IMG/VR virus record: IMGVR_UViG_3300022745_000017
Coordinates: 1 to 64,000 of that record
Direction: 5' to 3' (one strand)
Length of the DNA: 64,000 nt
In this document: positions 32,499-54,886 of the stretch, piece by piece
Numbering within the stretch: the stretch's first letter is position 1
How the letters are laid out: the number at the start of each line of letters is the position of its first letter
Notes under the pieces: generated by a model
Seen by the model: the letters and a program-made list of their open reading frames with translations, nothing else
The model's database searches: none
Told to the model about the DNA's origin: nothing
Program-made: the position numbers and the translations under genes

Positions 32499-33329
32499 TT
32501 AGCGTGAGGTCGAGAACTTCATTGCGATGAACTTGCGCATCTGGCGGTCATCGCTTTGGAATGCAACGAGCCTCCATTTTTGGAGTTGCTCTTGGTAGCT
32601 CTTGTAAGCGTCAGAGTAGCTGTCGATGATGCTCTTGAACGACCCCAGTGTGTAGCCGTTTTGGACTTCGTTTTGATCGATCGCTACGACCAGCTTTTTC
32701 CAGATGTGTGCTTTGGTAGCTAGCAGCACCAGCTCAGAGAAGATTGGAGCCGAGGACATTGGGATGTTGTTGAGCTCTTTGTCGTTCTCTAAGGTGCAAT
32801 CCAAATAGCAGTACGGAGTCAGTACAGCAGTGTCGTGAATCAAGATGGTGTTTTCATTGACCTTTGATACACGAGCTGTAGAGAGGATGGGGATGTTGTC
32901 AAAACTCTCCATCAGACTCTGGGAGGCTGCCATGGTCGCCGTAGCGTCACCAGACCCGAATAAGCTATTAGAGTATGAACCCGTGGAGGCTGTCGTATTT
33001 GAAGCGCTGTACGCTAAGAAGACGACTTTCGTAACGCCCATGATAGAGCGCCCCGAGGTCAGTGACTTAGGTATGCGAAACATGTAGCTGTAATCAGACG
33101 GCTTTTCATACCCGAGACCATCCAAGTTAATCATGGTCGTTGTCCCGCCCACGACATTACAGTCACTCATGACGCGACGGTAGATCACTTCTTCTTTGAT
33201 GATCTCTTCAATGTTAATGATCGAGCGAGACAAGTAGTTGATGTTCTTGCGAATGAATGCTCGCTCCAAGATTTCTTCTGGGATATCTGAGCTGCGCAGA
33301 TCCAACAGAGCCTTTTCAATAAGGTTCAT
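32499..33329 (-). CDS. conserved chimallivirus protein (276 aa)
   Basis: AGGAG RBS; IPEEILERAF, DCNVVGG and IIDSYSDA motifs. Confidence 0.7.
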   Translation of the reverse strand: MNLIEKALLDLRSSDIPEEILERAFIRKNINYLSRSIINIEEIIKEEVIYRRVMSDCNVVGGTTTMINLDGLGYEKPSDYSYMFRIPKSLTSGRSIMGVTKVVFLAYSASNTTASTGSYSNSLFGSGDATATMAASQSLMESFDNIPILSTARVSKVNENTILIHDTAVLTPYCYLDCTLENDKELNNIPMSSAPIFSELVLLATKAHIWKKLVVAIDQNEVQNGYTLGSFKSIIDSYSDAYKSYQEQLQKWRLVAFQSDDRQMRKFIAMKFSTSR

Positions 33330-33439: not shown

Positions 33440-33973
33440 ATGGAAAATACACCGCAAGGTGTCATGCAGGTTTTGCGAAACTTGCAAAAGGTTTTTCCCC
33501 TCCCACAAAGCTTACAACTGGGCTCTACCAAAGTGCCCGTTGTGTATCGGTGCTTCATTGAAGACGATACATTCGTCGTGAGTGGCTTCACGATGAGTAG
33601 CAAGCCTGAAGTCGAGCTCACTGCCATCCATCCTCAGGCCGAACTCTACATGCCCTTTGGCCGGCGAACGTGGGTGGCAGGAAATCAATTCGTCTTTGCT
33701 GACTATGTCAGCTCTGGCACGGGCACCAAAGCCTACGAGAAGTCCAATGGCCTGTTCAGCCTGTTCATGGCAGGTCAGCAGCCTTTGGCCATTGAATCTT
33801 TCCATGTCAACCTCAACAAGCCTGTGATGAACATGCAGTTCCGCTGTTCGCACCTTGAAGAGCTGGCTGACAGCTTGGTCAAATCTCCCGAGACATCTAC
33901 GGTTATCCGTGTGGTGGCTCCAGAAGTTGACGACCCCGTCGTCTCCGGCATTTCTTCCTTAACCGGTCAATAA
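33440..33973 (+). CDS. hypothetical protein (177 aa) co-transcribed with PhuZ
   Basis: AAAGG RBS; directly upstream of the tubulin gene. Confidence 0.7.
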   Translation: MENTPQGVMQVLRNLQKVFPLPQSLQLGSTKVPVVYRCFIEDDTFVVSGFTMSSKPEVELTAIHPQAELYMPFGRRTWVAGNQFVFADYVSSGTGTKAYEKSNGLFSLFMAGQQPLAIESFHVNLNKPVMNMQFRCSHLEELADSLVKSPETSTVIRVVAPEVDDPVVSGISSLTGQ

Positions 33974-33999: not shown

Positions 34000-34965
34000 A
34001 TGAAAGTTTCTCTGATTGCATTCGGTGGCTGTGGTCACAACCTGATGAAGGCCGTGTTGGAAGCTGAAGTCTTCCAAAAGGCTGAAAAGTTCCAGACGGA
34101 CTTGGTCAAAACCATCGATGGGCTCGATGGTGTCAAGACCTACACCTACAAAACCAAGGCCAAAGACGGCTGTGGCCGCAACCGCAATGCCGCTGTGGAG
34201 CCCGTCAAGCGCGAACTCGACAGCCTGGCGGTGGCCTGCCCTCCCGGTGATGTGGTGATCATGCTGCACTCCTTGGGCGGGGGTAGCGGGAATGTGCAAG
34301 CGCGCTACTACGGTGAGCTCGCGGCCAGCCAGGGCAAGCTGGTGTTCTCTCTTGGCGTGGGCTCCAAGAGCAACACCAAGGAGATTACCAACACGATTGG
34401 TAGTCTGGCCTCCCTGGAAAAGGCGGTGAGTGACGCTGGTGCGCCGATCATCTTCTGCCCCTTCTTCAATCAAAATGAAGCCAAGCGCGCCGAGGTGAAT
34501 GCACAGGTGATCGAAACGCTCAAGATGTTGGAACTCCTCTTCAGTGGCATTTGCAAGACGCCCGACGAGAGCGATCTGGCTTCTTGGGTGAACTTTCACA
34601 AAATCACCAAGGCCGAGCCCATGCTCACCTCCATCGTCTTCTTGGACGGCTCAGCCAAGAGCGACGATTGGGCCAAGGTCGAAAGCATTGAAAGCGTGAT
34701 CACGCTGACGACCGAAGAATCGCCAGCGCCCCTGCCGATTCTGCCTGCGTTTGATATTTGGGGCCAACTGCCGCCCAAGTACATTCTTAAGGCAGAAGGA
34801 AAGCTGCCGCAAGACCAGCGCCTGAGCTTTTGCCTCAGCGTGAATCACACGGCCGTCTTCATGGCCAAGATGCAAGAGATCCAAAAGGCCGACAAGGCCA
34901 GCAAAACGGCCTCTGTGCGCCGCTCTTCGCTGGCCGAAGGGGTAGATGAGGACGACGTGATCTGA
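34000..34965 (+). CDS. phuZ: phage tubulin PhuZ
   Basis: FGGCGHN, DGCGRNR, signature SLGGGSG, T7-like PDESD, acidic tail EGVDEDDVI. Confidence 0.92.
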   Translation: MKVSLIAFGGCGHNLMKAVLEAEVFQKAEKFQTDLVKTIDGLDGVKTYTYKTKAKDGCGRNRNAAVEPVKRELDSLAVACPPGDVVIMLHSLGGGSGNVQARYYGELAASQGKLVFSLGVGSKSNTKEITNTIGSLASLEKAVSDAGAPIIFCPFFNQNEAKRAEVNAQVIETLKMLELLFSGICKTPDESDLASWVNFHKITKAEPMLTSIVFLDGSAKSDDWAKVESIESVITLTTEESPAPLPILPAFDIWGQLPPKYILKAEGKLPQDQRLSFCLSVNHTAVFMAKMQEIQKADKASKTASVRRSSLAEGVDEDDVI

Positions 34966-34989: not shown

Positions 34990-35031
34990 CGCACTACCCG
35001 CATCATGTGCAGATGCGGGTAGTGCGATTTT
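34990..35031 (+). terminator. hairpin, 15-bp stem, after phuZ
   Basis: cgcactacccgcatc-atgtgca-gatgcgggtagtgcg followed by atttt. Confidence 0.75.
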
Positions 35032-35075
35032 CTACCCCTTTTGTTTTTAAATTAAACGATGATTCAAAACTCATT

Positions 35076-35798
35076 ATGGAAAAATACAGGTCTACTACCT
35101 CAATTGACAGTCTTGATATCTTGGAGACCTATTGCTTCGATATGTTTCCTCTGGCCACTGAAATCGAAGCGCGATTAGCTCCGCTTCTGAGGCCACTGCC
35201 TGAGCGCATCTACATTGGTGCTGACTTAGAAGGTATCGATCTCAACCGCGACTACTATTTCATGCAAACGGGGCGTGAGCGGGTGAGAGTGCGTAGTTTG
35301 CAAGACATTGTCCTTCCTGTATACCGACAAGACGGAGATGATGTAACAGGGATTGTGCGCCCCGTCATTACAAGCTGGCACCTTAGAAATAAGAGTGTGA
35401 CAGACACCCCAAGAGGCCCTAAGCGAGGCATCGCTATTTTATCTGACTACGTCAAGTATTTTGTCGATAGGATGTTGCCCCACTGTCGTGGCCATGATTT
35501 TATAACTTCGCTTGATAAACACATCCTTTTGACTCCTCGTAACTCACCGAGGGCATTCGAATACGGTAACACTGACGACGATAGTGACAGGCTTTATTGC
35601 GAAAAAGACGCGATAAAATGTGACATTGAGCAAATCATCGAAAACCTACTCACGAACATAAATCGATTCGTCGGAAGTTACCGAGACCATCTGTACTTCA
35701 TCAAACGTGACAAGACGTTTATGCTGATACAGCGCAGCATTGACCACCGAGCCTGGAACTGGCTACAGTCACAAGCACGCGAACAAGGCTATGATTAA
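35076..35798 (+). CDS. hypothetical protein, first of the coupled array
   Basis: The track start at 35007 lies in the hairpin, so ATG 35076 is more likely. Confidence 0.65.
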   Translation: MEKYRSTTSIDSLDILETYCFDMFPLATEIEARLAPLLRPLPERIYIGADLEGIDLNRDYYFMQTGRERVRVRSLQDIVLPVYRQDGDDVTGIVRPVITSWHLRNKSVTDTPRGPKRGIAILSDYVKYFVDRMLPHCRGHDFITSLDKHILLTPRNSPRAFEYGNTDDDSDRLYCEKDAIKCDIEQIIENLLTNINRFVGSYRDHLYFIKRDKTFMLIQRSIDHRAWNWLQSQAREQGYD

Positions 35799-35809
35799 AG
35801 GAAGTACAC

Positions 35810-36190
35810 ATGAAGAGTGTGATTATCGACCTATATCCAGCGCACGCTGAGTGTCTTAGTTTGCTCAATGAGCATATTGACATCGATGAAGCAGGCTGGG
35901 ACTTTAGCCTAGATGTTTTGCAGTTGGCTGTAGACTACCAACTCATGAGTGTGTCCAAGAACGTCGTCAAGCCTTCTAACACCCTTGAGCTACTAGAGCA
36001 ACAATTAGAGCAAACCGTCGGGCTCGACCGATCCAGCAGAGCGATATTCTTGAGACGTTTGACGGATGAGATCATTCGCAACATCTGTCGCTACCTGCCT
36101 GACTTACGGCTTGCGCAAGTCGCCTCTGTAAACTGGCTAACCCGAACACTCGTGATGATTACTTATGAAACAAAAGACAGTGGTCGTTGA
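35810..36190 (+). CDS. hypothetical protein (array member)
   Basis: AAGGA RBS; begins MKSVIIDLY. Confidence 0.7.
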   Translation: MKSVIIDLYPAHAECLSLLNEHIDIDEAGWDFSLDVLQLAVDYQLMSVSKNVVKPSNTLELLEQQLEQTVGLDRSSRAIFLRRLTDEIIRNICRYLPDLRLAQVASVNWLTRTLVMITYETKDSGR

Positions 36191-36530
36191 CCTATACTTG
36201 GCGCGCGATACACTTCATCAAGCACTCAGTGAGTGCGGCGTGGTGCCAGACAGAGCGGTTAGTGATGAGTTGTTTCAACACTTGTTGTTTCAACACCTCT
36301 GCCCGCCTGACGGAAACTCTCATGCACGAGCAGGATGTATTCGGATCATCTTAGGCGAGCATCGCTGGGATGAGGCTTGCTTTTATTGCAGCGATGAGTG
36401 GTTTTACATTCTTGAATATATGGATAGGGCGTGTAAGCTGGCAGGTGTCAACAAGCGCTTGCTGCCTGAAAACATACGCATGCTCACTCCAACCCTCATG
36501 CATGTCGTACTCACAAGGCACACGTTATGA
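36165..36530 (+). CDS. hypothetical protein (array member)
   Basis: Overlaps the previous gene; begins MKQKTVVVDLY. Confidence 0.65.
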   Translation: MKQKTVVVDLYLARDTLHQALSECGVVPDRAVSDELFQHLLFQHLCPPDGNSHARAGCIRIILGEHRWDEACFYCSDEWFYILEYMDRACKLAGVNKRLLPENIRMLTPTLMHVVLTRHTL

Positions 36531-37120
36531 ATGTGGTATTTGTTATAGATATGAAATACACAGACGCAGCGAAGTCCATTAGCCGAGCGCAAGCTTACAA
36601 CGCTGCGCTGGAGATGGACTTTTGTGTCTACAGCATCTTGGACTTGGTACTTGGCACCTTATGCATGCCGCGTGATTACGTGGATGAGTTCATAGACGCT
36701 ACGCAAGACGCAGACTTAGAGACAGCGTTTGCTAACTTGCTCGATTACTTCTACTGTGCACTCGATGCCATCTTAGATGACCAAGCCAGTGACATAGCCA
36801 TCCGAAATACACCCCAATTTAATAAAGATCAAGAGTTCCATTCTAAGATACACGCTAGTGACGACACTTACCTCAATGAGAGTGTCTCCAACACTTACCT
36901 CATCAGCACAGCGTTTGCTGAGCACGTCATCCAGACACTGCGCAGCAACCTCCCTGATGACCTGTTTTATCTCAAAGGTTACACTATCACCGATGCTAAA
37001 AAATTCCAGTTCGGTGGCCCTTACTACGTCACCGCAGAAATCGAAATCCTTAGAAAGTCCGTACCTCGTTTTAGACCTGTACGAGACTATTTGCGGCTTA
37101 GCAAGCTTTCCGCTCTTTAA
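36527..37120 (+). CDS. hypothetical protein (array member)
   Basis: ATGA start/stop coupling; begins MNVVFVIDM. Confidence 0.65.
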   Translation: MNVVFVIDMKYTDAAKSISRAQAYNAALEMDFCVYSILDLVLGTLCMPRDYVDEFIDATQDADLETAFANLLDYFYCALDAILDDQASDIAIRNTPQFNKDQEFHSKIHASDDTYLNESVSNTYLISTAFAEHVIQTLRSNLPDDLFYLKGYTITDAKKFQFGGPYYVTAEIEILRKSVPRFRPVRDYLRLSKLSAL

Positions 37121-37493
37121 CAACGAGGAAGTTTTAGAAACCGTCTTGAGGTTATTTTTTGAATACTTTGACGATGAGTGCGAGGCGCTGGATGATCTGG
37201 CGACCTATGTAGAGTGGCAATCAAAACTCGTCATGGAATCAATGCCTGTTGCGATGAGTGATGAAGCTTTGAAAGAAATGACATGGGTGTGTCAGAGCTG
37301 TCTCTACACTGCACTTGAAATATTTATAAGAACTTTGCGCAAACTAGGGGTCATTGACCATGCAAACAGACTACCATATGCGCTGGATAGGCGCTTGCCA
37401 AACAATAGAGTACTATGCAAACGAAAGCAAGTACTCCCTATACCCAGGCGCAGTGGCGATGGATATCCCGGAGCTGGCGCAGATATCTTCTGA
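36993..37493 (+). CDS. hypothetical protein (array member), start uncertain
   Basis: Frame open from 36858; last ATG before the YLVLDLY motif is at 36993. Confidence 0.55.
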   Translation: MLKNSSSVALTTSPQKSKSLESPYLVLDLYETICGLASFPLFNNEEVLETVLRLFFEYFDDECEALDDLATYVEWQSKLVMESMPVAMSDEALKEMTWVCQSCLYTALEIFIRTLRKLGVIDHANRLPYALDRRLPNNRVLCKRKQVLPIPRRSGDGYPGAGADIF

Positions 37494-37824
37494 TCAATAT
37501 GTCCAAGGGGACTTACATAAAGAAGTCATCTGTGTAGACACACTCAAAGCAATTCGCAATCAGTGCAGTGCGCTTAACAACATCCACGTCCTAGCTGATT
37601 GCGAAGACTGGCGATTTGCTGTGTCTGTCGAAAAAGACGGTAGTGCTGATGAGGTCGACGTACTAAGCATTGCCTTAGGGATTTATGATAGATGCAACTA
37701 CCGCAGACTCTATACGCACGCTGGCAAACTAAGGTACTCATTTTACAGTGTCGTTGGCACTGTGCTGCTGATTATCCGCAATGACATCATGGCTAGGATG
37801 GTAAGAGATGAGACCATTGCCTGA
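37360..37824 (+). CDS. hypothetical protein (array member)
   Basis: AGGGG upstream of ATG 37360; AVAMDI motif. Confidence 0.55.
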   Translation: MQTDYHMRWIGACQTIEYYANESKYSLYPGAVAMDIPELAQISSDQYVQGDLHKEVICVDTLKAIRNQCSALNNIHVLADCEDWRFAVSVEKDGSADEVDVLSIALGIYDRCNYRRLYTHAGKLRYSFYSVVGTVLLIIRNDIMARMVRDETIA

Positions 37825-38206
37825 CACTGTAATCGTTGACTTACATGACTGTGCCGAGGTACTGCCTAAACACATCAGAGATGTTTTACATCCTGGGGAT
37901 TGGACGACACTGATGCACTTGGCCATTGATCAATGCATCAGTGTTTATATCCACCGACCGGACTACTGCCGCCTAGATCTAAGGATGCTGAGGTGTTACC
38001 GCAGAGCCCCGTCTTATCGCAACATGAATATAACCGAGGACGTTTGTAGAGACATCAAAACGAGCTTTGCAACGCTGTGCGAAGCAGTTCGCCACCGGCT
38101 GTGGATGACGCTAGGGCCACAAGCCGCTGGAGAAGACGGCGGTCTCGATTATATGGTGGTACAATTCGCTTTCAGTCGCGTCATCTTGAGACGCTTTAAA
38201 AATTGA
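37808..38206 (+). CDS. hypothetical protein (array member)
   Basis: Overlap-coupled; begins MRPLPDTVIVDLH. Confidence 0.65.
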   Translation: MRPLPDTVIVDLHDCAEVLPKHIRDVLHPGDWTTLMHLAIDQCISVYIHRPDYCRLDLRMLRCYRRAPSYRNMNITEDVCRDIKTSFATLCEAVRHRLWMTLGPQAAGEDGGLDYMVVQFAFSRVILRRFKN

Positions 38207-38217
38207 GGTCATAGAAA

Positions 38218-38610
38218 ATGTTTAATCTAGTCGTCGGTAACAGCTACACGTTCAACATGTTGGCTCCCCAGACGTTTGGCGCTACTTTTGTTAACGCAAA
38301 AGTAGAAGGCATTGTGAGTTATAACATCGCCATGCTCACGGAGAATGTGGCTCACTTGCACGCCAAGGTGTTGCCTTACCTGCCAGCGGGCACCAGCGCA
38401 GATCCGGCTAACTTGAGCTATGTCATCATCACGACCATGTCAGGAGCAAGGCGCGCTATAGCGATGGACTGGATCGCTGACCAGCCTGCTGAGAGTGGTA
38501 CGAGTGTCATTGTGTTTCGCTGCGTGGGTAGTGCCTCCGATGTGGCTGCTTACATGGCCATGTTCGCAGAAAACAATCGCCAAGTCATTGACTACACCCT
38601 GTCTAACTAA
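38218..38610 (+). CDS. phiKZ gp49-like small beta-rich (SH3-fold-type) protein
   Basis: GAGG RBS; GNSYTFNMLAP...FVNAKV...LPYLPAGT; sits just upstream of the DNA polymerase. Confidence 0.65.
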   Translation: MFNLVVGNSYTFNMLAPQTFGATFVNAKVEGIVSYNIAMLTENVAHLHAKVLPYLPAGTSADPANLSYVIITTMSGARRAIAMDWIADQPAESGTSVIVFRCVGSASDVAAYMAMFAENNRQVIDYTLSN

Positions 38611-38613
38611 CCC

Positions 38614-38657
38614 TTAAGCCCACCTACTCACAGATCGTTGTGAGTAGGTGGGCTTAA
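38614..38657. terminator. hairpin, 19-bp stem
   Basis: ttaagcccacctactcaca-gatcgt-tgtgagtaggtgggcttaa. Confidence 0.65.
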
Positions 38658-38710
38658 AAAACCATGATTCTTTTGTATTGTTTGTGAGCTAACTCTTACC
38701 TCTTAAAACC

Positions 38711-40942: not shown

Positions 40943-42025
40943 TTACAGATAACCCAGTAGTTTAGAAAACTTAGCCTTCTCCTCGAAAAACAAATCAGAA
41001 GGCAATACCTCTTGCATGATCTCGATGGTGCTGTCAGACTTGATGGACTTGGCCATCTGGTAAATGTCGTGACGATTGGCCGCTGAGCTCTTGACTTGAC
41101 CTAAGTCAATCAAGAATAATACTTCATCAATCCGAGCTAGCTGGAGTGCCCAGTTGATTTGCCTTGTCAGAGACACTTCCGGTATCTTTAAGAACTCTCC
41201 TGCGTTGGTGAGTGTGATCAAATCCATACACTCTAGCATTGCATCAAAGTCGGCCTTAGCCAAACGAATGTTGCCAAGCATCTTAGAGATGCCTCTGTCC
41301 ACATGCGCTGTGTGATTGGCTAGATTAAAAGGGTGGTATTTGAAGCTTACGTCCGTGTAGTCGTTTTGTCCGTAGTGCAAACGCATCAGTCTTTTGATAA
41401 TCGCATTATCGAGCTGACTATAGAGAATGTTTGGAATGACAAACCGCGCAACAAACTGTGTGGTCGTTCCAGCGTAGTCATTAGCTGAGCACCATTTCTT
41501 ATAAGAGCGGTACTGAAGAGCTAGGCGAGGGATATCGATCTGGAAGATAGACAGCCCGGTTTGTGTTGAGTATGCTTGCCCATTGGCTAGCATCAGCGCT
41601 AGATCCGACTTAGGGGAGCGCAGCACCTTGATAGCTTGTACATTCCACCACTGGGCTTCATCATGGTTAGGATTGAAAGACTCGTTGACACTGATCAATA
41701 GCTCTGTTGAGCCTGCACCAAAAAAGAGACCCTTAAAGACCCTACCTACATTGTAAGGCCCAGTCCAACCAAGCATCGAAGTCATAGAGACTGCGTTAAG
41801 TGCGATATCGTCGATGTAATTATAGGGACTTTGTGTAGGTGGTGTTGGCACGGAGTTCAGCAGGCGTACAAGCAGGTGATCTGACTTAACCACAAAGACG
41901 TGCTTGCGGTAGTAGTCAATCGTCGTAGCGATGTTTTGGCGCATCATGCGGCGCACATAAGGCCAAATGATCGGATGCTGTACACCAGACACAATTGGAC
42001 TATAGTAGGTAAAGTAATCGAACAT
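40943..42025 (-). CDS. phiKZ gp52-like conserved (virion) protein
   Basis: 360 aa, inverted between DNA polymerase and chimallin as in phiKZ-like phages; AAGG RBS. Confidence 0.65.
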   Translation of the reverse strand: MFDYFTYYSPIVSGVQHPIIWPYVRRMMRQNIATTIDYYRKHVFVVKSDHLLVRLLNSVPTPPTQSPYNYIDDIALNAVSMTSMLGWTGPYNVGRVFKGLFFGAGSTELLISVNESFNPNHDEAQWWNVQAIKVLRSPKSDLALMLANGQAYSTQTGLSIFQIDIPRLALQYRSYKKWCSANDYAGTTTQFVARFVIPNILYSQLDNAIIKRLMRLHYGQNDYTDVSFKYHPFNLANHTAHVDRGISKMLGNIRLAKADFDAMLECMDLITLTNAGEFLKIPEVSLTRQINWALQLARIDEVLFLIDLGQVKSSAANRHDIYQMAKSIKSDSTIEIMQEVLPSDLFFEEKAKFSKLLGYL

Positions 42026-42202
42026 GTGGATGACCTTAAAAGCTTTTCGTATGAATATTTACGCCGCGTTGACATACGATGTCCGACACAGATGCAAACA
42101 TTAATTTTTTACACAATCACCTATAGTGTGTAGAAGATTAGCGTCTTCACACTGATCGGCGTAAGCTGGTCAAGCGAAGCTGTGTTGTCTTTTGTGGTCT
42201 TA

Positions 42203-42233
42203 AAAAATTTGACCCACATATCACCCTTATGAC
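42203..42233 (+). promoter_or_regulatory. putative promoter of chimallin
   Basis: AAAAATTTGACCCACATATCACCCTTATGAC; weaker second copy at about 42105-42130. Confidence 0.6.
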
Positions 42234-42279
42234 TTGACATCCGTGTCGTGTCGTTTTAACTCTTGCAAGAGGATTTTTC

Positions 42280-44220
42280 ATGTCGACTCCCACTGGGATC
42301 AAAATCGGTGGCGCTTCCCCTTTGGTGCGCCCTGTAACCACCGCCCCTGCCGCTGCACCCGCAGCTCCTTCCTCCCCCGCCTACAGTAAGCGAGAAGATG
42401 CAATGGAAAAAGACAAAGACTTCGATCAGCGCGCCAACTGGCGCGCTAAAGCCATCAGCACCCCCAGCCAATCTGCGCAAGCCGGTGACCTGCTGGAGCT
42501 GACCCGCAAGGTCATGAGCGATTACAACATCCCTGGCTGCAAGCTCTCGGCCGAGCTGGTCTCTGGCACGACCTACGGCCTGCTGTTCTCGACGGTGGTG
42601 GTGCGCCTCTCTGCTGGCTCCAGCCATGCGGTGTACATGCTGGCTGCTGAAGGCAGCTTCGCCGATGGTCGCTACCCCGACGCTGTCGTCAAAGTGGCCA
42701 ACTCCGGCGAAGTAAGTGTGGCCCGTGGCCCGATGGACGCACTGGGCGGCAAGTATGCCAAGACTTTGACCGACCATGTCTTGGCTGGCCTGCCCCACGG
42801 TGACACCCTCATCTACGTGGGCAACACCTACGTCCCGCGTGAGTGGGATTGTGGCGCGGACACGAGCGTCAACGTGCGCACCAAGGTGGTTGGCCTGATC
42901 GTCAACGCCATCGCAGCGGTGGCCGCTGAGTTCACCGAGCAACGCGGCGAGCAGCCCATCAATTTGGCAACATGGTTGCAACCAGGTGAAATCCTGGAAG
43001 CCGCTGTTTCGTTCGGCAACGAACCTCGCCCCAATGCCCTCGGCGTGCCCACTCGCACCGATGTCATCATCGACCTGCGCACTGCGGTGACTGGTCGCAC
43101 AGCTGTGCGTGAACGCGACCGCGACGGGTTCGACTTCATGGACTTGAACACCACCAAGGGCGGCGGCACACTGGCGTCGATCGGTGGTTGGCTCCAAGCC
43201 GAATGGATGCCTGAAACGGGCGAGGTCGTGCGTGACTCCGAAGGCCGGATCTTGCCGCGCCCCTTGGCGGCTCGCTTGATCTTGAGCAACCTCGTCAGCA
43301 CCGAAGCCAAGTGCTTGTCCCTCACCACGTTGGCGGTGGCAACGGCAGCGGTAATGCGTCAAAGCAGCATCTGGTGGCATGGCTTCAAGCCGCGCTACAA
43401 TGCCACGCAAGCGGTGAAGGACGCCACGAACGTGGGCGCGCTGGATGTGCTGGTGAACCTGGCCGAACGGATGACGCCGCGTACCGCCATGGGTGACATC
43501 CCCTATGGCGAAGTGCAACGCCTGGGCAGCGACGCTGAGTGGGATTTCTTCATGAACGCCAGCTTTCAGCAACGTCTGGCCATCGGCTTGCTGGTGCCTG
43601 CGGCTGATCCCGAAAGCTGGGCCCTCGATCCTTTCCTGCGCTCAGCGCTGGGCGATCCCGACAGCGATGCCTTGATCGCAGGGTTGCTGAACTGGTTGAC
43701 CAACAACAAGTTCGCCGACTACTACGACGGTGGCTCGATCTGCCTACCCTACTCCGAGCAGGTGCAAACGGGCACCTACACCGGCAGTGATGGCATGCCA
43801 CGCCCCATCGAGGACGTTGACTTGACCGCCGTTTGCGCCCGCTTTGGCAAGCAGCAGCCTGACGGCATCGTGGCCTGGATGAACGCCGTCAACGACGCCA
43901 ACACGTCGTTTGCCCGCTCGGCAGCCAGCCGCGCGACGATCCGTGACACGGTGCTGGGTGTGCCCAGCAAGGTGCGTGGCACTGCCACCATCGTGATGCT
44001 GCGTGGCCATGTTCTGGACGCCGCACAACGTGCCATGGACGCCGCCAAGGTCAGCCCGCGTGTCATCGCTCCTGGCCTGGCTGCCATCGATCAGCGCCGT
44101 CAAGGTGCTCGCTGGGGTGATGCCTTGCTGGACAGCCGCACCTACGGGCGTGGTCGTGGTGGTGACGACGGTGGTGGCAGCACGCTGAGCCTGCGCAGTC
44201 GCGCCTTCCGCAACGCTTAA
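42280..44220 (+). CDS. chmA: chimallin, major phage nuclear shell protein (phiKZ gp54-like)
   Basis: 646 aa between the DNA pol/gp52-like genes and nvRNAP beta'N; disordered Pro/Ala N-terminus, GVPTRTD, GTYTGSDGMPRPIEDVD, RRQG...Gly/Arg C-tail; strong C/G codon bias; GAGGA RBS. Confidence 0.85.
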   Translation: MSTPTGIKIGGASPLVRPVTTAPAAAPAAPSSPAYSKREDAMEKDKDFDQRANWRAKAISTPSQSAQAGDLLELTRKVMSDYNIPGCKLSAELVSGTTYGLLFSTVVVRLSAGSSHAVYMLAAEGSFADGRYPDAVVKVANSGEVSVARGPMDALGGKYAKTLTDHVLAGLPHGDTLIYVGNTYVPREWDCGADTSVNVRTKVVGLIVNAIAAVAAEFTEQRGEQPINLATWLQPGEILEAAVSFGNEPRPNALGVPTRTDVIIDLRTAVTGRTAVRERDRDGFDFMDLNTTKGGGTLASIGGWLQAEWMPETGEVVRDSEGRILPRPLAARLILSNLVSTEAKCLSLTTLAVATAAVMRQSSIWWHGFKPRYNATQAVKDATNVGALDVLVNLAERMTPRTAMGDIPYGEVQRLGSDAEWDFFMNASFQQRLAIGLLVPAADPESWALDPFLRSALGDPDSDALIAGLLNWLTNNKFADYYDGGSICLPYSEQVQTGTYTGSDGMPRPIEDVDLTAVCARFGKQQPDGIVAWMNAVNDANTSFARSAASRATIRDTVLGVPSKVRGTATIVMLRGHVLDAAQRAMDAAKVSPRVIAPGLAAIDQRRQGARWGDALLDSRTYGRGRGGDDGGGSTLSLRSRAFRNA

Positions 44221-50536: not shown

Positions 50537-52135
50537 ATGCAAATCAATCTACCGAAAGATCCTATTGCCAGCAAAGGCATGACCGCGCACCTGATGCATA
50601 AGGGGTTGGTATTGGAGTGGGATGTTTCCCAGTTTCCATTCCGTGCATTCAAGGCTGATGTGCTCTCCAGACATATCAACGCCTATTGGGCGAGCTTACC
50701 CAGCGCAAGGCAAGATCAGATCTTTGAGGTTTACAGAACCATTCGCAAGATCTTCGACCGAGCCAGCGACGTTTTTAGTGTCCAAGAGTTCAGTGTCAAT
50801 GCGCTGATTTGTGAACTCAAGGACCCCTGCTGTCAGTTGATCAACTTGCACCCATTTGACGACATCTGGAAATGGGCAAGTGTGCGCCAAGACATTGTCG
50901 TGCCTGCGAGCATGAAAAATAGCTTCAATCCTGATAGTGATTGGATGCAGACAGCTGCCAAGACTTATACTGCGATGGACTACACGCAGTTGACAGCGAT
51001 GGTCGTTATGCTTCGGTCACTGATTCCGGTGTGGGGTGAGTTTTTGTTTCGAACCAACAGCGAGATCAGCAACTCCTGGAAAAGCTACTACGCTTTGCAG
51101 TTGGTGGACTCAGCCGAGATCATGACGTGTATTCCGATGGAGAAGTTGACGCAATACGTTTTGCACAACATGCCCAAGGACAAGACCAATGCGGCTGCAA
51201 CACTGGAAGGCGCTAGCACTGAGGAGTATCCGACGATGCTGCTAGCGACACTGCTCATCGGTAAAGTCGCCGTAGGTGACATTAGCAAGGTCGTCGATGA
51301 GACTAACCTCGTGACCATCATCTTCAATGCGCTGGGTACAAAAAGCGGTGTGAACAATGGTGCGTTGTTTCGTAACAACGACATTCGCATGAAGGACTTC
51401 CCAGAAGACGGCGACGGTGCGCTGGCTGTTTCACGTATTGAGTCGATGCGTGCTCAGATGGAGATCCCTTCGAGTGCCATTGTCACGGCCAATTATTACG
51501 CAAGCAAGCCATTCGATGTCCTGGAAAAGATTGACAAGAGTTGTCCACCCCAACTACTTGAGACGTTTAGCCAGAACAATCTACGGCTTATCGGGGCATC
51601 ACACCGCATCAAAGATGTGCAAGTCTTGTTGACGAGCTATGTCGTGCACAAAGCCATGTCAGCGAGGTATTTGCCCTACATTGACAAGAGCAATGTCATC
51701 AATTGCATCAGTGTAGCTCAAGCCGTTTTGTGGCATTGGGGATTCAAACAACTGGCTGGCTTGCTTAGCGCTAGTGTCCCTAATGATGCAGGCATGATGG
51801 CTGCCACCGGGACGTGCTTTAACATCCCTAGCGAGCTGATGGCCAAGCTCCAAGACATCTATCCTTACGGGCAACCTGCGCCTACCCGTAAGAAATACGA
51901 AGCAAACGAAGATGCTTCCCAACGTGCCACAAGGAGAGTCCCACCCGTCTCAAGAGACATCGCTCACATCACCGAGCAGCTCACTCAATACGAGTGGCTG
52001 ATCAACCTCCCCAAAAACATGCTGGAAGAAGTCACAGGTCGCGCTGAACAGCGCAGACTACCTTGCCCCAGCGATATCCGCGTACAGCTAGCCCAACTAG
52101 CTATTCGCATCCACTCAGCCTCTATGGAGAAATAA
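50537..52135 (+). CDS. non-virion RNAP promoter-specificity (sigma-like) subunit (phiKZ gp68-like)
   Basis: 532 aa; INAYWASLPSARQDQIFEVY, KTYTAMDYTQL, LIPVWGEF, AQAVLWHWGF; synteny. Confidence 0.72.
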   Translation: MQINLPKDPIASKGMTAHLMHKGLVLEWDVSQFPFRAFKADVLSRHINAYWASLPSARQDQIFEVYRTIRKIFDRASDVFSVQEFSVNALICELKDPCCQLINLHPFDDIWKWASVRQDIVVPASMKNSFNPDSDWMQTAAKTYTAMDYTQLTAMVVMLRSLIPVWGEFLFRTNSEISNSWKSYYALQLVDSAEIMTCIPMEKLTQYVLHNMPKDKTNAAATLEGASTEEYPTMLLATLLIGKVAVGDISKVVDETNLVTIIFNALGTKSGVNNGALFRNNDIRMKDFPEDGDGALAVSRIESMRAQMEIPSSAIVTANYYASKPFDVLEKIDKSCPPQLLETFSQNNLRLIGASHRIKDVQVLLTSYVVHKAMSARYLPYIDKSNVINCISVAQAVLWHWGFKQLAGLLSASVPNDAGMMAATGTCFNIPSELMAKLQDIYPYGQPAPTRKKYEANEDASQRATRRVPPVSRDIAHITEQLTQYEWLINLPKNMLEEVTGRAEQRRLPCPSDIRVQLAQLAIRIHSASMEK

Positions 52136-53614
52136 ATGTCCTATGGTATTCGCAGCGTTACTGCTGTCTCAATCAGTTTTCAGGAAATCGGCGGATACGA
52201 TCCGGTTTACTTGCGCCCATGGGAGATGGCCTACAGCGAACGCGAGAAAGGTGCGTTTGTCGATGCCCTGGGCGGCGCGAGCCAGGTCACCGTCGGTGCA
52301 ATGGCTCGCGTCGCACACCACCTTATCAAGCCTTCGGTGCGCCCCTATGGTGCGGCTGAGATTGCCAACGGCTGGGAAACCCAGCGCTTTCGCTTTTGCG
52401 GTACGTTCGAAATGGAACGGCTGGATGGGGACATCTTCTACTGTGAAGTCCAGGGCTATACTGACTACCTTGGGATCACAGACATGGGAGACCAGATCGA
52501 TCCCAAGATGGTTTTGCACATCAATAGCCTGACCAACCTCTATAAGTCGGTGCGGCGAACTCCCACCGGCTCACAAGCACATGCTCGTGTGCTCAACTCG
52601 TGTCAGGCAGTCAACACAGTTGGTGAAGAAGACACCTATGCGTTGCGACCCGAGGACATCGCACGAAAAGTGCAGTTGCTGGAAATTGGAGATTCGCCCG
52701 ACGAGCGCAGCAATGGGCAAATCTCCATGGCGATGGACTTGACATCGAAGATCACCGCTGAGGGCGCTCTGAGCAACCGCTCAAACCAAGTGGCTTCCAG
52801 CATGCTGGTCAGGACACTCAATCCGTTCTTTGCTCAAACGCTCAACCCCGAGGGCCCGAGTGAGACGTATAACCTGATCGAGGAAGCGCTGCCCGAGATG
52901 CGCTCCACGAGCGTGACATCTGACCAATTCATCAGCTACATCAATGGAGATGATCGATTCAATTACAACAGGCGCTGTAATGAGATCACATGGGGTGATT
53001 TGTGCTACAAGATCCCCAACGCATTACGCGTGACGACCGTCTTGCACTTGGACTCGCGCCAGCGCATGGGTTTGGATCGCCCTGGCATGTACCAGGGCTG
53101 GAACAACACCCTGCCAGAAACCATTTTTGCAGATCAAGTCCTCAAAAGCTTGCCGGCATTGATGGGTGAGTACTACCTGAACACGGTGGCATTCACAGTG
53201 TCTAACTATGACACTGGCAACGGCCAAGCTTACTTTGCTTGGTCACAAGCGCCGACCTTGTCGGTGCCGGGTCTCGATGAGTTGCGCTTGGCTACGGGGT
53301 TCGAAAACCGCATCCTGATGGAGCTCTATGCCATCAGCCGGTCTAATCTGATCGGCTATCACCTGGAAGTGTTCTGTAGCGCCGACGGCATGTTCCGCTG
53401 CAAGTTGGGCATCGAAGGCGCATCGCCCTTGACCTACGCTGCGCCAGTGCTGGCAGACTCCCTGTTCCCGCCGGTCTTGACGACCAATCCGAATCACCTG
53501 CAAAACCTGGCCGCAGGTTTCAATGACTTGTACACGGTCGTGCAGGACTATGTGGCCAGCCACAACACCCGAGCACCTGTGCGTGAAGCAGCGCGCTTGC
53601 TTGGAAATCTGTAA
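52136..53614 (+). CDS. nuclear protein-import factor PicA/Imp1 (phiKZ gp69)-like
   Basis: 492 aa; IANGWETQRFRF, GYTDYLG, LRPEDI, ADSLFPPV; directly after the gp68-like gene. Confidence 0.7.
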   Translation: MSYGIRSVTAVSISFQEIGGYDPVYLRPWEMAYSEREKGAFVDALGGASQVTVGAMARVAHHLIKPSVRPYGAAEIANGWETQRFRFCGTFEMERLDGDIFYCEVQGYTDYLGITDMGDQIDPKMVLHINSLTNLYKSVRRTPTGSQAHARVLNSCQAVNTVGEEDTYALRPEDIARKVQLLEIGDSPDERSNGQISMAMDLTSKITAEGALSNRSNQVASSMLVRTLNPFFAQTLNPEGPSETYNLIEEALPEMRSTSVTSDQFISYINGDDRFNYNRRCNEITWGDLCYKIPNALRVTTVLHLDSRQRMGLDRPGMYQGWNNTLPETIFADQVLKSLPALMGEYYLNTVAFTVSNYDTGNGQAYFAWSQAPTLSVPGLDELRLATGFENRILMELYAISRSNLIGYHLEVFCSADGMFRCKLGIEGASPLTYAAPVLADSLFPPVLTTNPNHLQNLAAGFNDLYTVVQDYVASHNTRAPVREAARLLGNL

Positions 53615-53623
53615 GGAAAAAAG

Positions 53624-54886
53624 ATGGAAGACATCTATGCCCAGGTCGTAAAGGCCTACACACCCATTCTGGCCAATGCAGGATTAATCGCATCTGCCGA
53701 TGGCTACATCAGCATCGTCGGCAGCGACAAGCCTTTGCCCTTCATCACGGAAGGCAAGCGCTGGGTATTGCCAGTTCGTGAACGCCTGGCTGACCCATCA
53801 GTGTTGGCTAACAACCACGTCTTTCACCCACTCAGTGAAAGCAGTCTGATGGAGTCCGAGTCACCAGTGCTGTCGCGTTTGCGCATTGCACAACTGGCCC
53901 GACTGAACTTCCAGCTGTGTGCACTGTTTGGCTCCCTGGTGGCTCTCATCACCAGTACTGCCTTGCACGCCACACTGGTGGGCGATCAGCGACAACTCAT
54001 CAACGCCACACCTGAAGCAACGGAAAAGACCATGGAAGTGGTCAACAAGTTGCTGGAGGTGATGAAAGGCCAGGTGCGGGAGAACTGCTTTGTCAGTATC
54101 TTCTTGAAGCGCCATGCGATCGTGCGTGGCAAGACGTACACGCGTGGCGCGATCGTGCGCTGGCCGCTGTACGAGGCCATCAAAGCAGCAGGCAAGAAAG
54201 ACAAGATCTTTGGCGTCGATGTCAAGGAAAAAGATCGCTCGACGATCTTGGCGGTGTTGGAGTACATGATCCCTGGCATCGGTGAATCGGAGCAATCCAT
54301 TTACAACCAAGGCTCACTCCATCCCGATGCGCCTTTTCTGGATGCGCTGCTGCGCTGTGTTGGCAAGATCGCTGGGTGTGTCACGACGATCGTATCGTTG
54401 TTCGGTGATCACGTCCCTGACCACAAGCTGTTTGCCTACAGTGATGAGTGGCGTGAGGTCATGGACAACCCCGACAACTACGCCAAGTTGACACGGATCA
54501 TTGCGACACCAGCGGAAGACTCTCCCGCCAGATCGATGTCCATGGCAGCCCCAGCTCCAACCACCCAGCAAACTGCGGGCAAGAAGTCCAAGACTATCGC
54601 CGAGCTGATGGCAGAAGCCCCACCTGCTTACGTTGATCCTCGCTACGAGCGCCGTGGTTACGCCCCGCGCCAGTATGAGGATGATCGCTACGACTCGCGT
54701 GTCAGTGCTTTGCCTCGGGCGCGTGATGACCGGGGTTATGATGATCGTCGTTACGACCCACCCCCACCACGTCGTGAAGAGCCACGCGATTGGAGCGGTA
54801 TCCGCCGAGTGGAGCCAGATCCCTACGAGCGTCGCGGTTACGATGACGATCGGCGTGGCTACCGACCAGGGCTTGATCGCCTGTAA
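53624..54886 (+). CDS. phiKZ gp70 / Nlp-like nucleus-associated protein with R/D/Y-rich tail
   Basis: AAGGA RBS; KRWVLP, VFHPLSES, SIFLKR; low-complexity C-terminus; synteny. Confidence 0.6.
   Translation: MEDIYAQVVKAYTPILANAGLIASADGYISIVGSDKPLPFITEGKRWVLPVRERLADPSVLANNHVFHPLSESSLMESESPVLSRLRIAQLARLNFQLCALFGSLVALITSTALHATLVGDQRQLINATPEATEKTMEVVNKLLEVMKGQVRENCFVSIFLKRHAIVRGKTYTRGAIVRWPLYEAIKAAGKKDKIFGVDVKEKDRSTILAVLEYMIPGIGESEQSIYNQGSLHPDAPFLDALLRCVGKIAGCVTTIVSLFGDHVPDHKLFAYSDEWREVMDNPDNYAKLTRIIATPAEDSPARSMSMAAPAPTTQQTAGKKSKTIAELMAEAPPAYVDPRYERRGYAPRQYEDDRYDSRVSALPRARDDRGYDDRRYDPPPPRREEPRDWSGIRRVEPDPYERRGYDDDRRGYRPGLDRL

What the first reader, a model, noticed from the sequence alone, without database searches (positions are those of the whole stretch)
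35076..38206. Seven coupled ORFs between phuZ and DNA polymerase look like a tandem array of highly diverged paralogs
Seen: all seven carry a hydrophobic strand ending in Asp-hydrophobic near the N-terminus (YCFDM, VIIDLY, VVVDLY, FVIDM, LVLDLY, VAMDI, VIVDLH). Each then has a helical-looking middle and ends in two short beta-like segments (e.g. VNWLTRTLVMITYE, IRMLTPTLMHVVLTR, YSFYSVVGTVLLIIR, YMVVQFAFSRVILRR). They abut or overlap, two junctions by about 130 nt, suggesting translational coupling and fixed stoichiometry. Recalled knowledge: the equivalent phiKZ interval includes import factors Imp2 (gp47) and Imp5 (gp48). Inference: one fold expanded into a hetero-oligomer or a set of cargo adaptors, possibly an undescribed part of the nuclear import or replication machinery.
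Basis: partly seen in the sequence, partly recalled or inferred. Interest (0 to 1): 0.65.

Follow-up and report, generated by a model that had tools for sequence, protein, structure and literature searches.

The report
Diverged paralog array in nucleus-forming phage
Between the tubulin and DNA polymerase genes of this freshwater nucleus-forming jumbo phage lies a row of small genes, at least four of which are very old, highly diverged copies of one protein fold that is also predicted for the phiKZ nuclear-import adaptor Imp2, so the row may be a set of import adaptors found across this phage family.

Summary
The seven + strand ORFs, the quoted motifs, the C-terminal strand pairs and two overlaps of about 130 nt are all present. 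Independent assemblies show no indels there.

The paralogy claim is partly right.
- o5, o6 and o7 belong to one family (famC), which sits two or three times in a row at this position in most related phage contigs.
- o2 belongs to the position-1 family (famA).
- famA and famC are linked by profile-profile comparison (76%, E 2e-5, end to end).
- Confident AlphaFold2 models of o2 and o7 share the same strand, four-helix, two-strand order. About half of each model's top 50 BFVD matches are shared, and nearly all named matches are chimallivirus proteins.
- o3 and o4 carry the motif but have no detectable relatives anywhere.
- o1 belongs to the conserved phiKZ gp43 family. Its link to the fold is only hinted.

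The fold has no solved relative. It does match predicted models of Imp2 homologues (PhiPA3 gp044).

The most likely function is a set of cargo-specific adaptors for Imp1-dependent import. This is inferred, not shown. A co-fold test of the hetero-oligomer idea gave no answer.

The parts
34990..35026 (+). 15-bp perfect hairpin with a T-rich tail between phuZ and o1. It is terminator-like and marks the 5' boundary of the o1-o8 unit.
35076..35798 (+). o1, 240 aa. Member of the phiKZ gp43 / Eowyn gp075 family, with an N-terminal strand, an insertion, a C-terminal hairpin and a DYRIxDW-like motif. Possibly a distant, enlarged member of the same fold; not shown.
   Evidence: Iterated HMM finds the family in 71 loci, including phiKZ gp43. 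Psa21, PhiPA3 and 201phi2-1 homologues score E 1e-10 to 1e-14. Consensus. hhalign to famA is only 23% over 23 N-terminal columns.
35810..36190 (+). o2, 126 aa. Position-1 family (famA). Predicted fold is strand, four helices, two strands.
   Evidence: hhalign to famA built without window sequences: 54%, E 1.3e-4, 98 columns. AF2 pLDDT 91.8. Best full-length fold hit is an Eowyn 153-aa protein, TM 0.71, the length of Eowyn gp076, which famA's HMM hits at 1.3e-12.
36165..36530 (+). o3, 121 aa. Orphan with the N-terminal VVVDLY motif and a C-terminal strand pair. Borderline famA similarity. Contains the LFQHL-LFQHL tandem duplication.
   Evidence: (score 18.5 against a control maximum of 17.45)
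36527..37120 (+). o4, 197 aa. Orphan with the N-terminal FVIDM motif. Its C-terminal GGPYY...EILRK resembles the famC consensus G.LPY.F...VLlr. No statistical support for membership.
36993..37493 (+). o5, about 166 aa (start uncertain: 36993 ATG or 37014 GTG). famC paralogue at position -3. Overlaps o4 by at least 107 nt.
   Evidence: famC HMM without window sequences: 15.6 bits, E 2e-5. hhalign 69%, 115 columns..
37354..37824 (+). o6, 148-156 aa (candidate starts 37354, 37360 or 37378). famC paralogue, and orthologue of the position -2 clade. Overlaps o5 by at least 116 nt.
   Evidence: 19.8 bits, E 1e-6. hhalign 71%. Tree: clade of 36 leaves, 33 from position -2, holds o6. SNP 37389 is synonymous in both frames.
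37808..38206 (+). o7, 132 aa. famC paralogue, and orthologue of the position -1 clade.
   Evidence: 15.0 bits, E 3e-5. hhalign 40%, 116 columns. Clade of 24 leaves, all from position -1. AF2 pLDDT 86.5, pTM 0.80.
38218..38610 (+). o8, 130 aa. SH3DP domain protein (equivalent to phiKZ gp49). Last gene of the unit and not part of the paralogue family.
   Evidence: PF20287, 63.9 bits. hhalign to the gp49 group 100%.
38614..38657 (+). Hairpin with 19-nt perfect arms between o8 and the DNA polymerase gene. Marks the 3' boundary of the unit.
52136..53614 (+). Homologue of Imp1/PicA (phiKZ gp69), the import factor that such adaptors would work with.
   Evidence: E 4.6e-26. ORF.

Best explanation
The interval is this phage's version of a unit found in nearly every nucleus-forming (chimalli-) phage examined. 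The unit is a gp43-family gene (o1), then five or six small, tightly packed genes, then the SH3DP gene and the DNA polymerase.

The small genes are ancient, extremely diverged paralogues of one roughly 125-aa fold. An N-terminal strand pairs with a C-terminal hairpin on a four-helix core. Related phages usually have the order A B C C C. This window has A (o2), two orphans (o3, o4), then C C C (o5, o6, o7). Each C copy is orthologous to the copy at the same position in other phages, so the copies have been kept apart for a long time and are not redundant.

The same fold is predicted for homologues of phiKZ Imp2. Imp2 sits at the equivalent place in phiKZ, next to Imp4. I therefore think the most likely role is a set of cargo-specific escorts: each binds one cargo in the cytoplasm and presents it to Imp1 (homologue at 52136-53614) for import into the phage nucleus.

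Shown: the genes are real, four are paralogous, the array is conserved, and the fold is shared with Imp2 homologues at the level of predicted structure. Inferred: membership of o3, o4 and o1, and the import function.
For: - **Array conservation.** 71 loci hold an o1 homologue, and 5-6 small ORFs lie between it and SH3DP. phiKZ, PhiPA3, Psa21, 201phi2-1, Viktualia, PS119XW and Eowyn have the same layout.
- **famC.** 122 distinct sequences. 43 of 71 loci carry two or more copies, and the commonest order is A B C C C.
- **Window proteins against profiles built without them.** o6 30.5, o5 30.5, o2 27.9 and o7 25.3, against a maximum of 17.45 for 14 control small proteins of the same window. HMM E-values 1e-6 to 3e-5.
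- **Links between families.** famA-famC 76%, E 2.3e-5, 111 columns. famB-famC 56%, E 1.1e-4, 116 columns. Controls 1.7% or less. 11 sequences are hit by both the famB and famC HMMs.
- **Models.** o7 and o2 are confident and share one order of secondary-structure elements. Both hit the same chimallivirus proteins in BFVD, several per phage. These include PhiPA3 gp044, the Imp2 homologue (TM 0.53 and 0.52, prob 0.84 and 0.99). They also include proteins the length of Imp2 homologues: SL2 178 aa, Psa21 183 aa and PS119XW 264 aa. PDB searches give only background.
- **Positional orthology.**
- **Purifying selection.**
- **Literature.** Imp2 (orf47) and Imp4 (orf48) are cargo-specific import factors, Imp2 is itself imported through Imp1, and both lack transposon insertions.
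Against: - No sequence-level link connects any window protein or famA/B/C to the phiKZ-clade groups. Imp2 group to famC is 0.4%, Imp4 group to famC is 0.3%, and the best is the gp45 group at 18% over 44 columns.
- Foldseek E-values to Imp2 homologues are weak (0.01-0.1) and TM is only about 0.5.
- The BFVD entries other than PhiPA3 gp044 were identified by length only.
- o3 and o4 have no detectable relatives, and their ESM Atlas models are poor.
- o1 shows no significant profile similarity.
- A shared fold does not establish a shared function. Only two of the phiKZ array genes have an import phenotype.
- The co-fold with the Imp1 homologue gave no answer.
Confidence: 0.45

Rival explanations
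1. The paralogues assemble into one hetero-oligomer. The tight packing and overlaps would set equal amounts of each subunit, and the complex would act as a single machine part at the nuclear shell or the replisome.
For: Three famC copies are kept side by side as separate orthologous lines in most relatives. Starts and stops overlap. A three-stranded sheet with free edges could pair between copies.
Against: phiKZ selections hit imp2 alone for Nlp1, and hit imp4 but not imp2 for TopA. That fits separate adaptors better than one obligate complex. Copy number varies from 0 to 6 famC genes per locus. No computational support was obtained.
Confidence: 0.15
2. They are accessory factors of DNA replication that work with the SH3DP protein and the DNA polymerase encoded directly downstream, for example by loading or tethering replisome parts inside the phage nucleus.
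For: The position directly upstream of SH3DP and the polymerase is fixed in every locus examined. o1-o8 are bracketed by two strong hairpins as one unit.
Against: No similarity to any known replication protein in Pfam, PHROGs or PDB. The sequences turn over very fast, which is unusual for core replisome parts. The only members of the equivalent phiKZ array with a known phenotype affect import.
Confidence: 0.15
3. They are fast-evolving host-takeover or counter-defence proteins, each aimed at a different host target, and the shared scaffold is merely a convenient small fold.
For: Orthologues become undetectable by sequence at 52% polymerase identity. There are lineage-specific duplications, with up to six famC copies in L058. 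o3 and o4 are orphans.
Against: The array is kept at one place, in a fixed positional order, across a very wide clade. This is unlike typical accessory anti-defence islands. Strain-level variation is mostly synonymous. phiKZ imp2 and imp4 tolerate no insertions.
Confidence: 0.15
4. Only o2 and o5-o7 are related. o1, o3 and o4 are unrelated small proteins whose N-terminal hydrophobic-Asp motif and C-terminal strands are coincidental or convergent.
For: o4 and o1 score within the control range, and o3 is only just above it. No homologues or usable models exist for o3 and o4.
Against: In the window's gene set the motif occurs within the first 40 residues only in array genes. Related arrays have famA, A' or B members at those positions. 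Proteins with the lengths of gp43-family members appear among the fold hits.
Confidence: 0.3

Closest known systems
phiKZ Imp2 (gp47) and its PhiPA3 homologue gp044, a cargo-specific nuclear import factor
   Same: It lies in the same syntenic array between the gp43-like gene and SH3DP/DNA polymerase. It is a small protein. Its predicted fold matches the o7 and o2 models (PhiPA3 gp044 TM 0.53 and 0.52). The genome also has an Imp1 homologue.
   Different: No sequence or profile similarity. Imp2 homologues are longer (170-310 aa). Function and localisation are untested here. Imp2 was described as conserved only in Pseudomonas phages.
phiKZ Imp4 (gp48), needed for TopA import
   Same: It is the last gene of the array before the SH3DP gene, as o7 is. 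Its size is similar (127 aa against 132 aa). It has an N-terminal hydrophobic strand and a C-terminal strand pair by eye.
   Different: No profile similarity (0.3%). I could not identify it among the fold hits. The function is untested.
phiKZ gp43 family (for o1)
   Same: o1 is a member by iterated HMM, and it occupies the same position at the head of the array.
   Different: o1 is shorter than the phiKZ-clade members (240 aa against 305-357 aa) and carries an insertion that phiKZ and Eowyn lack. No function is known for the family.
Paralogous gene families of jumbo phages, such as the phiKZ inner-body proteins gp93/162/163 and baseplate proteins gp131-135
   Same: Tandem or dispersed expansion of one fold within a jumbo phage genome.
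   Different: Those are virion proteins with recognisable sequence families (PF12699). This array is non-virion by context, is far more diverged, and has no Pfam or PHROG family.

Membership tests
famC (family defined here: last three positions of the array) | Significant match to the family profile built without the query | tested here: met
   o5, o6 and o7 score 15.6, 19.8 and 15.0 bits, E 2e-5, 1e-6 and 3e-5. hhalign gives 69%, 71% and 40% against controls of 2.8% or less. o2, o3, o4 and o1 do not match famC directly.
famC | Position among the last three genes before SH3DP, grouping with the copies at the same position in other phages | tested here: met
   o6 falls in the position -2 clade (33 of 36 leaves) and o7 in the position -1 clade (24 of 24). 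o5's neighbours are mixed between -3 and -1.
famA (position-1 family) | Profile match and a coherent structure model from the family alignment | tested here: met
   o2 gives hhalign 54%, E 1.3e-4, 98 columns and AF2 pLDDT 91.8. o3 is borderline at 4.7% with score 18.5.
One superfamily covering famA, famB and famC | Profile-profile similarity over the full length, above controls | tested here: met
   A-C 76%, E 2.3e-5. B-C 56%, E 1.1e-4. A-B only 1.5%. Controls 1.7% or less. The tool's hhalign gives A3-A2 62%, E 7.7e-5. 11 sequences are shared by the famB and famC HMMs.
One superfamily covering famA, famB and famC | Same predicted fold | tested here: met
   Tested for A (o2) and C (o7) only. 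They have the same order of elements, and about 25 of each top-50 BFVD list are shared. No direct superposition tool was available.
Imp2 (phiKZ gp47) family | Sequence homology to gp47 and its homologues | tested here: not met
   The Imp2 group of six phages against famA, famB and famC gives 0.1-1.0%. HMM E is above 0.3.
Imp2 (phiKZ gp47) family | Same fold | tested here: inconclusive
   Foldseek against predicted models: PhiPA3 gp044 TM 0.53 and 0.52, prob 0.84 and 0.99. Length-matched SL2, Psa21, Noxifer and PS119XW entries give TM 0.35-0.56. E-values are 0.01-0.1.
Imp2 (phiKZ gp47) family | Required for import of a specific cargo, and itself imported through Imp1 | not testable with these tools
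   Needs genetics and microscopy. The co-fold job gave no answer.
Imp4 (phiKZ gp48) family | Sequence homology to gp48 and its homologues | tested here: not met
   The Imp4 group against famA, famB and famC gives 0.26-0.35%.
phiKZ gp43 family (o1) | Profile match, and position at the head of the array | tested here: met
   The iterated HMM reaches 71 loci, including phiKZ gp43 and Eowyn gp075. Independent phiKZ-clade members score E 1e-10 to 1e-14.
SH3DP, PF20287 (o8) | Pfam match above the gathering score | tested here: met
   63.9 bits against a cut-off of 25.
Chimalliviridae (genome context) | Chimallin, PhuZ and Imp1/PicA present | tested here: met
   PF25677 43.5 bits at 42850-44052. PhuZ-like tubulin at 34000-34965. 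Imp1 homologue.

The most novel reading that the evidence does not exclude
Every nucleus-forming phage carries, at one fixed place ahead of its DNA polymerase, a family of five to seven paralogues of a single phage-specific fold. These include gp43-like proteins, Imp2 and Imp4. Together they form the cargo-recognition layer of the nuclear import system, with one paralogue per cargo class feeding Imp1. Import specificity in this phage family would then have evolved by duplication and divergence of one adaptor gene, much as importin-alpha or karyopherin families did in eukaryotes.
Probability: 0.25. Interest if true: 0.8.

Novelty: new variant of a known kind. Interest (0 to 1): 0.6.

Why it matters
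How proteins are chosen for entry into the phage nucleus is an open question. So far only Imp1 is known to be broadly conserved, and the adaptors Imp2 and Imp4 were thought to be limited to Pseudomonas phages.

If the syntenic array is one diverged adaptor family present throughout the Chimalliviridae, three things follow:
- It gives a list of candidate adaptors in every such phage.
- It suggests which uncharacterised phiKZ genes (gp44-gp46, gp43) to test next.
- It offers a simple evolutionary route to import specificity.

It also defines a fold with no solved relative and no Pfam or PHROG family. The papers I could search describe no paralogy among these genes.

Tried and rejected
- **Pairwise BLASTP among the seven** gave nothing significant.
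- **Pfam and PHROGs** on o1-o7, on 60 famC members and on phiKZ gp43-gp48 gave no family. The only hits were sub-threshold noise such as F-box and YegS_C.
- **Close relatives.** Megablast against phages found none. Single-protein scans of viral contigs with PhuZ and the polymerase found none. The nearest polymerase (78% identical) sits on a 3.9-kb contig without the array.
- **o3 and o4.** Word-index searches of 5.8 billion proteins returned only themselves. Their ESM Atlas models are poor (pLDDT 0.56 and 0.43) with meaningless neighbours. Orthologues at 52% polymerase identity were already invisible to phmmer in a database of 2,648 ORFs, so it could not have helped.
- **Co-fold.** The Imp1 homologue with o5, o6 and o7 (partner o7) scored 0.26 and 0.30, below the mark of 0.32. 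The controls were not run. This is no answer, and is not evidence for or against binding.
- **DNA repeats.** No long repeats in the array, so no recent duplication or gene conversion.
- **o1 against the families.** Only a 23-column N-terminal local match.
- **Rest of the genome.** The famC and famA profiles find no further copies in the 218-kb genome. One weak hit (E 0.013) lies outside the window.
Full report
**Context.** The window is the first 64 kb of a 217,973-bp IMG/VR virus record with direct terminal repeats. It is a nucleus-forming jumbo phage. It encodes a PhuZ-like tubulin (34000-34965, 24% identical to that of Klebsiella phage Eowyn). It also encodes a chimallin (PF25677 above cut-off, 42850-44052), a divergent family-B DNA polymerase (PF20286, 38711-40891) and a homologue of the import factor Imp1/PicA (52136-53614). 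The same DNA occurs in freshwater metagenomes from five studies.

**The observation.** Seven + strand ORFs fill 35076-38206. The junctions are +11, -26, -4, about -128, about -134/-140 and -17 nt. The two long overlaps cannot be explained away, because no usable start codon lies closer to the conserved N-terminal strand of o5 or o6. Contigs from other studies cover both junctions without a single indel. Among the listed differences of a roughly 98.6% strain variant, 35 are synonymous and 5 are not. The one SNP inside the o5/o6 overlap is synonymous in both frames. So these are real genes under purifying selection. A 15-bp hairpin with a T-rich tail (34990-35026) and a hairpin with 19-nt perfect arms (38614-38657) bracket o1 through the SH3DP gene o8.

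**Is the shared motif more than chance?** The pattern [VILF][VILFA][VILM]D[LMI] occurs 8 times in 19,251 aa of the window's approximate gene set. All six of o2-o7 have it within their first 40 residues. In the gene set scanned (which dropped the overlapping o4-o6), the only genes with it there were o2, o3 and o7. o1 does not fit the strict pattern.

**Sequence-level paralogy within the window.** There is none by BLASTP, and no Pfam or PHROG family matches. The question therefore needed relatives.

**Relatives and synteny.** The phage has no close relative in the phage or viral-contig collections. Polymerase homologues at 35-53% identity gave one ENA contig and 80 viral loci with 10 kb of upstream DNA. 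An iterated profile from o1 finds a homologue in 71 loci, including phiKZ gp43 and Eowyn gp075. Members from PhiPA3, Psa21, 201phi2-1, PS119XW and Viktualia match at E 1e-8 to 1e-14. Between that gene and the SH3DP gene, almost every locus has five or six small, abutting or overlapping ORFs. The cultured phages phiKZ, PhiPA3, Psa21, 201phi2-1, Viktualia and PS119XW have the same layout, and Eowyn has nine such ORFs between its gp43 homologue and its SH3DP gene. In phiKZ these are gp44, 44.1, 45, 46, 47 and 48.

**Families in the array.** I clustered 381 array ORFs. One family, famC, recurs two or three times in a row at the last positions. After iteration it holds 122 distinct sequences. 43 of 71 loci have two or more copies, and the commonest order is A B C C C.

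Profiles built without any window sequence pick out o5, o6 and o7. HMM scores are 15.6, 19.8 and 15.0 bits (E 2e-5, 1e-6, 3e-5). hhalign gives 69%, 71% and 40%, with o5 and o7 aligned over 115-116 columns. o2 matches the position-1 family famA at 54% (E 1.3e-4, 98 columns). Fourteen other small proteins of the same window reach at most score 17.45. o3 reaches 18.5, o1 reaches 14.9 and o4 reaches 12.9. So four proteins are supported, o3 is borderline, and o1 and o4 are not supported by sequence.

A tree of famC splits by position. o6 sits in a clade of 36 leaves, of which 33 come from position -2. o7 sits in a clade of 24 leaves, all from position -1. The triplication is therefore old, and each copy has been kept separately.

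**One superfamily?** Merged profiles give the following:
- famA to famC: 76%, E 2.3e-5, 111 columns, end to end.
- famB to famC: 56%, E 1.1e-4, 116 columns.
- famA to famB: only 1.5%.
- Control families (SH3DP, gp43): 1.7% or less.

The tool's own hhalign on A3 against A2 gives 62%, E 7.7e-5, aligning o2 residues 2-118 with o7 residues 6-129. Eleven sequences are hit by both the famB and famC HMMs. famC reads P.yLILD...G.LPY.F...VLlr. famA begins svVISL and ends FdLtnRgDLlIt, and famB begins iILPT and ends qWIG.DLLV.

- o7, with 60 famC sequences: pLDDT 86.5, pTM 0.80. Strand 7-11, helices 13-26, 29-45, 59-71 and 77-102, strands 115-121 and 124-129.
- o2, with 34 famA sequences: pLDDT 91.8, pTM 0.82. 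Strand 2-7, helices 9-20, 27-46, 58-70 and 74-95, strands 102-109 and 114-121.

**Link to import factors.** So "Imp5 (gp48)" is an error. Imp2 is needed for import of Nlp1 and is itself imported in an Imp1-dependent way. Imp4 and Imp5 are needed for TopA. Imp2 and Imp4 were reported as conserved only among Pseudomonas phages. Later work calls them cargo-specific adaptors, and neither tolerates transposon insertions.

Both of my models match the BFVD model of PhiPA3 gp044, the Imp2 homologue named in that paper and in the PhiPA3 annotation (TM 0.53 and 0.52, prob 0.84 and 0.99). They also match entries whose lengths equal the Imp2 homologues of SL2, Psa21 and PS119XW. At the sequence level there is no link. 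The Imp2 and Imp4 groups from six phages score below 1% against famA, famB and famC. The connection to Imp2 therefore rests on synteny plus predicted fold. I rate it as moderate.

**o1, o3 and o4.**
- o1's family has an N-terminal "liid" strand followed by a helix. Many members, including o1, carry an insertion. The family ends with a C-terminal hairpin and a conserved DYRIxDW motif. Its only profile signal is a 23-column N-terminal match to famA (23%). Entries with the lengths of Eowyn gp075 (187 aa; prob 0.99, TM 0.57 with o2) and Psa21 gp039 (305 aa; prob 0.47 with o7) are among the fold hits. o1 may be an enlarged member, but this is a hint only.
- o3 and o4 have no homologue anywhere and poor Atlas models.
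- Their case rests on three things. They carry the motif. Their positions are held by famA-like or famB-like genes in relatives. o4's C-terminal GGPYY...EILRK resembles the famC consensus.

**Mechanism.** The best-supported reading is an old duplication series of one small scaffold whose copies have diverged to bind different partners. Three facts point to cargo-specific escorts for Imp1-dependent nuclear import:
- The only characterised genes at this place act in import, each for a different cargo.
- Imp2 homologues share the predicted fold.
- The genome has an Imp1 homologue.

This is inference. The rivals are a hetero-oligomer, replication accessory proteins tied to SH3DP and the polymerase, and fast-evolving host-directed proteins. 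My data exclude none of them.

**Novelty.** I found no description of paralogy among these genes in the searchable literature, and no Pfam or PHROG family. I rate it a new variant of a known kind. It concerns known array genes and known adaptors in one phage. What is new is the unification into one fold family that appears general to the Chimalliviridae, plus a divergent six-gene example here.

Noticed in passing
window 34990-35026 and 38614-38657: Two strong hairpins bracket o1 through the SH3DP gene. One has a 15-bp stem with a T-rich tail, and the other has 19-nt perfect arms with a 6-nt loop. They may be transcript boundaries or processing sites.
   Followed up: partly
window 36269-36296 (inside o3): An exact 13-nt direct repeat at 15-nt spacing encodes the duplicated peptide LFQHL-LFQHL. 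This is a small in-frame tandem duplication in an orphan gene.
   Followed up: no
window 33440-33973: A 177-aa ORF lies between the DUF7484 gene (32499-33329, minus strand) and phuZ. It has relatives in only 9 of the fetched loci and matches no family.
   Followed up: partly
window 52136-53614, with neighbours 50537-52135 and 53624-54886: An Imp1/PicA homologue (E 4.6e-26 to phiKZ gp69), flanked by 532-aa and 420-aa ORFs in the same order as phiKZ gp68 and gp70.
   Followed up: partly
L102 and L105 (both in the viral record that holds L054): One 322-kb relative carries two Imp1-like genes, with E 1.9e-24 and 9.7e-10 to the window's Imp1 homologue.
   Followed up: no
own genome 206901-207167, minus strand (outside the window): A weak famC-profile match (E 0.013, 12.9 bits) inside a 284-aa open frame. 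It could be a further diverged copy or noise.
   Followed up: no
window 42001-44000: The most GC-rich bin of the window (0.594 against about 0.50) coincides with the chimallin gene.
   Followed up: no
L058 6354-8852: One relative has six consecutive famC genes. The extra ones resemble the position -3 copy, which indicates a lineage-specific expansion.
   Followed up: partly
window 35000-38700 in public runs: The phage is present in freshwater metagenomes of five studies. One assembly from a different study is identical over every piece laid (largest 1,253 nt). Other runs carry a variant about 98.6% identical.
   Followed up: yes
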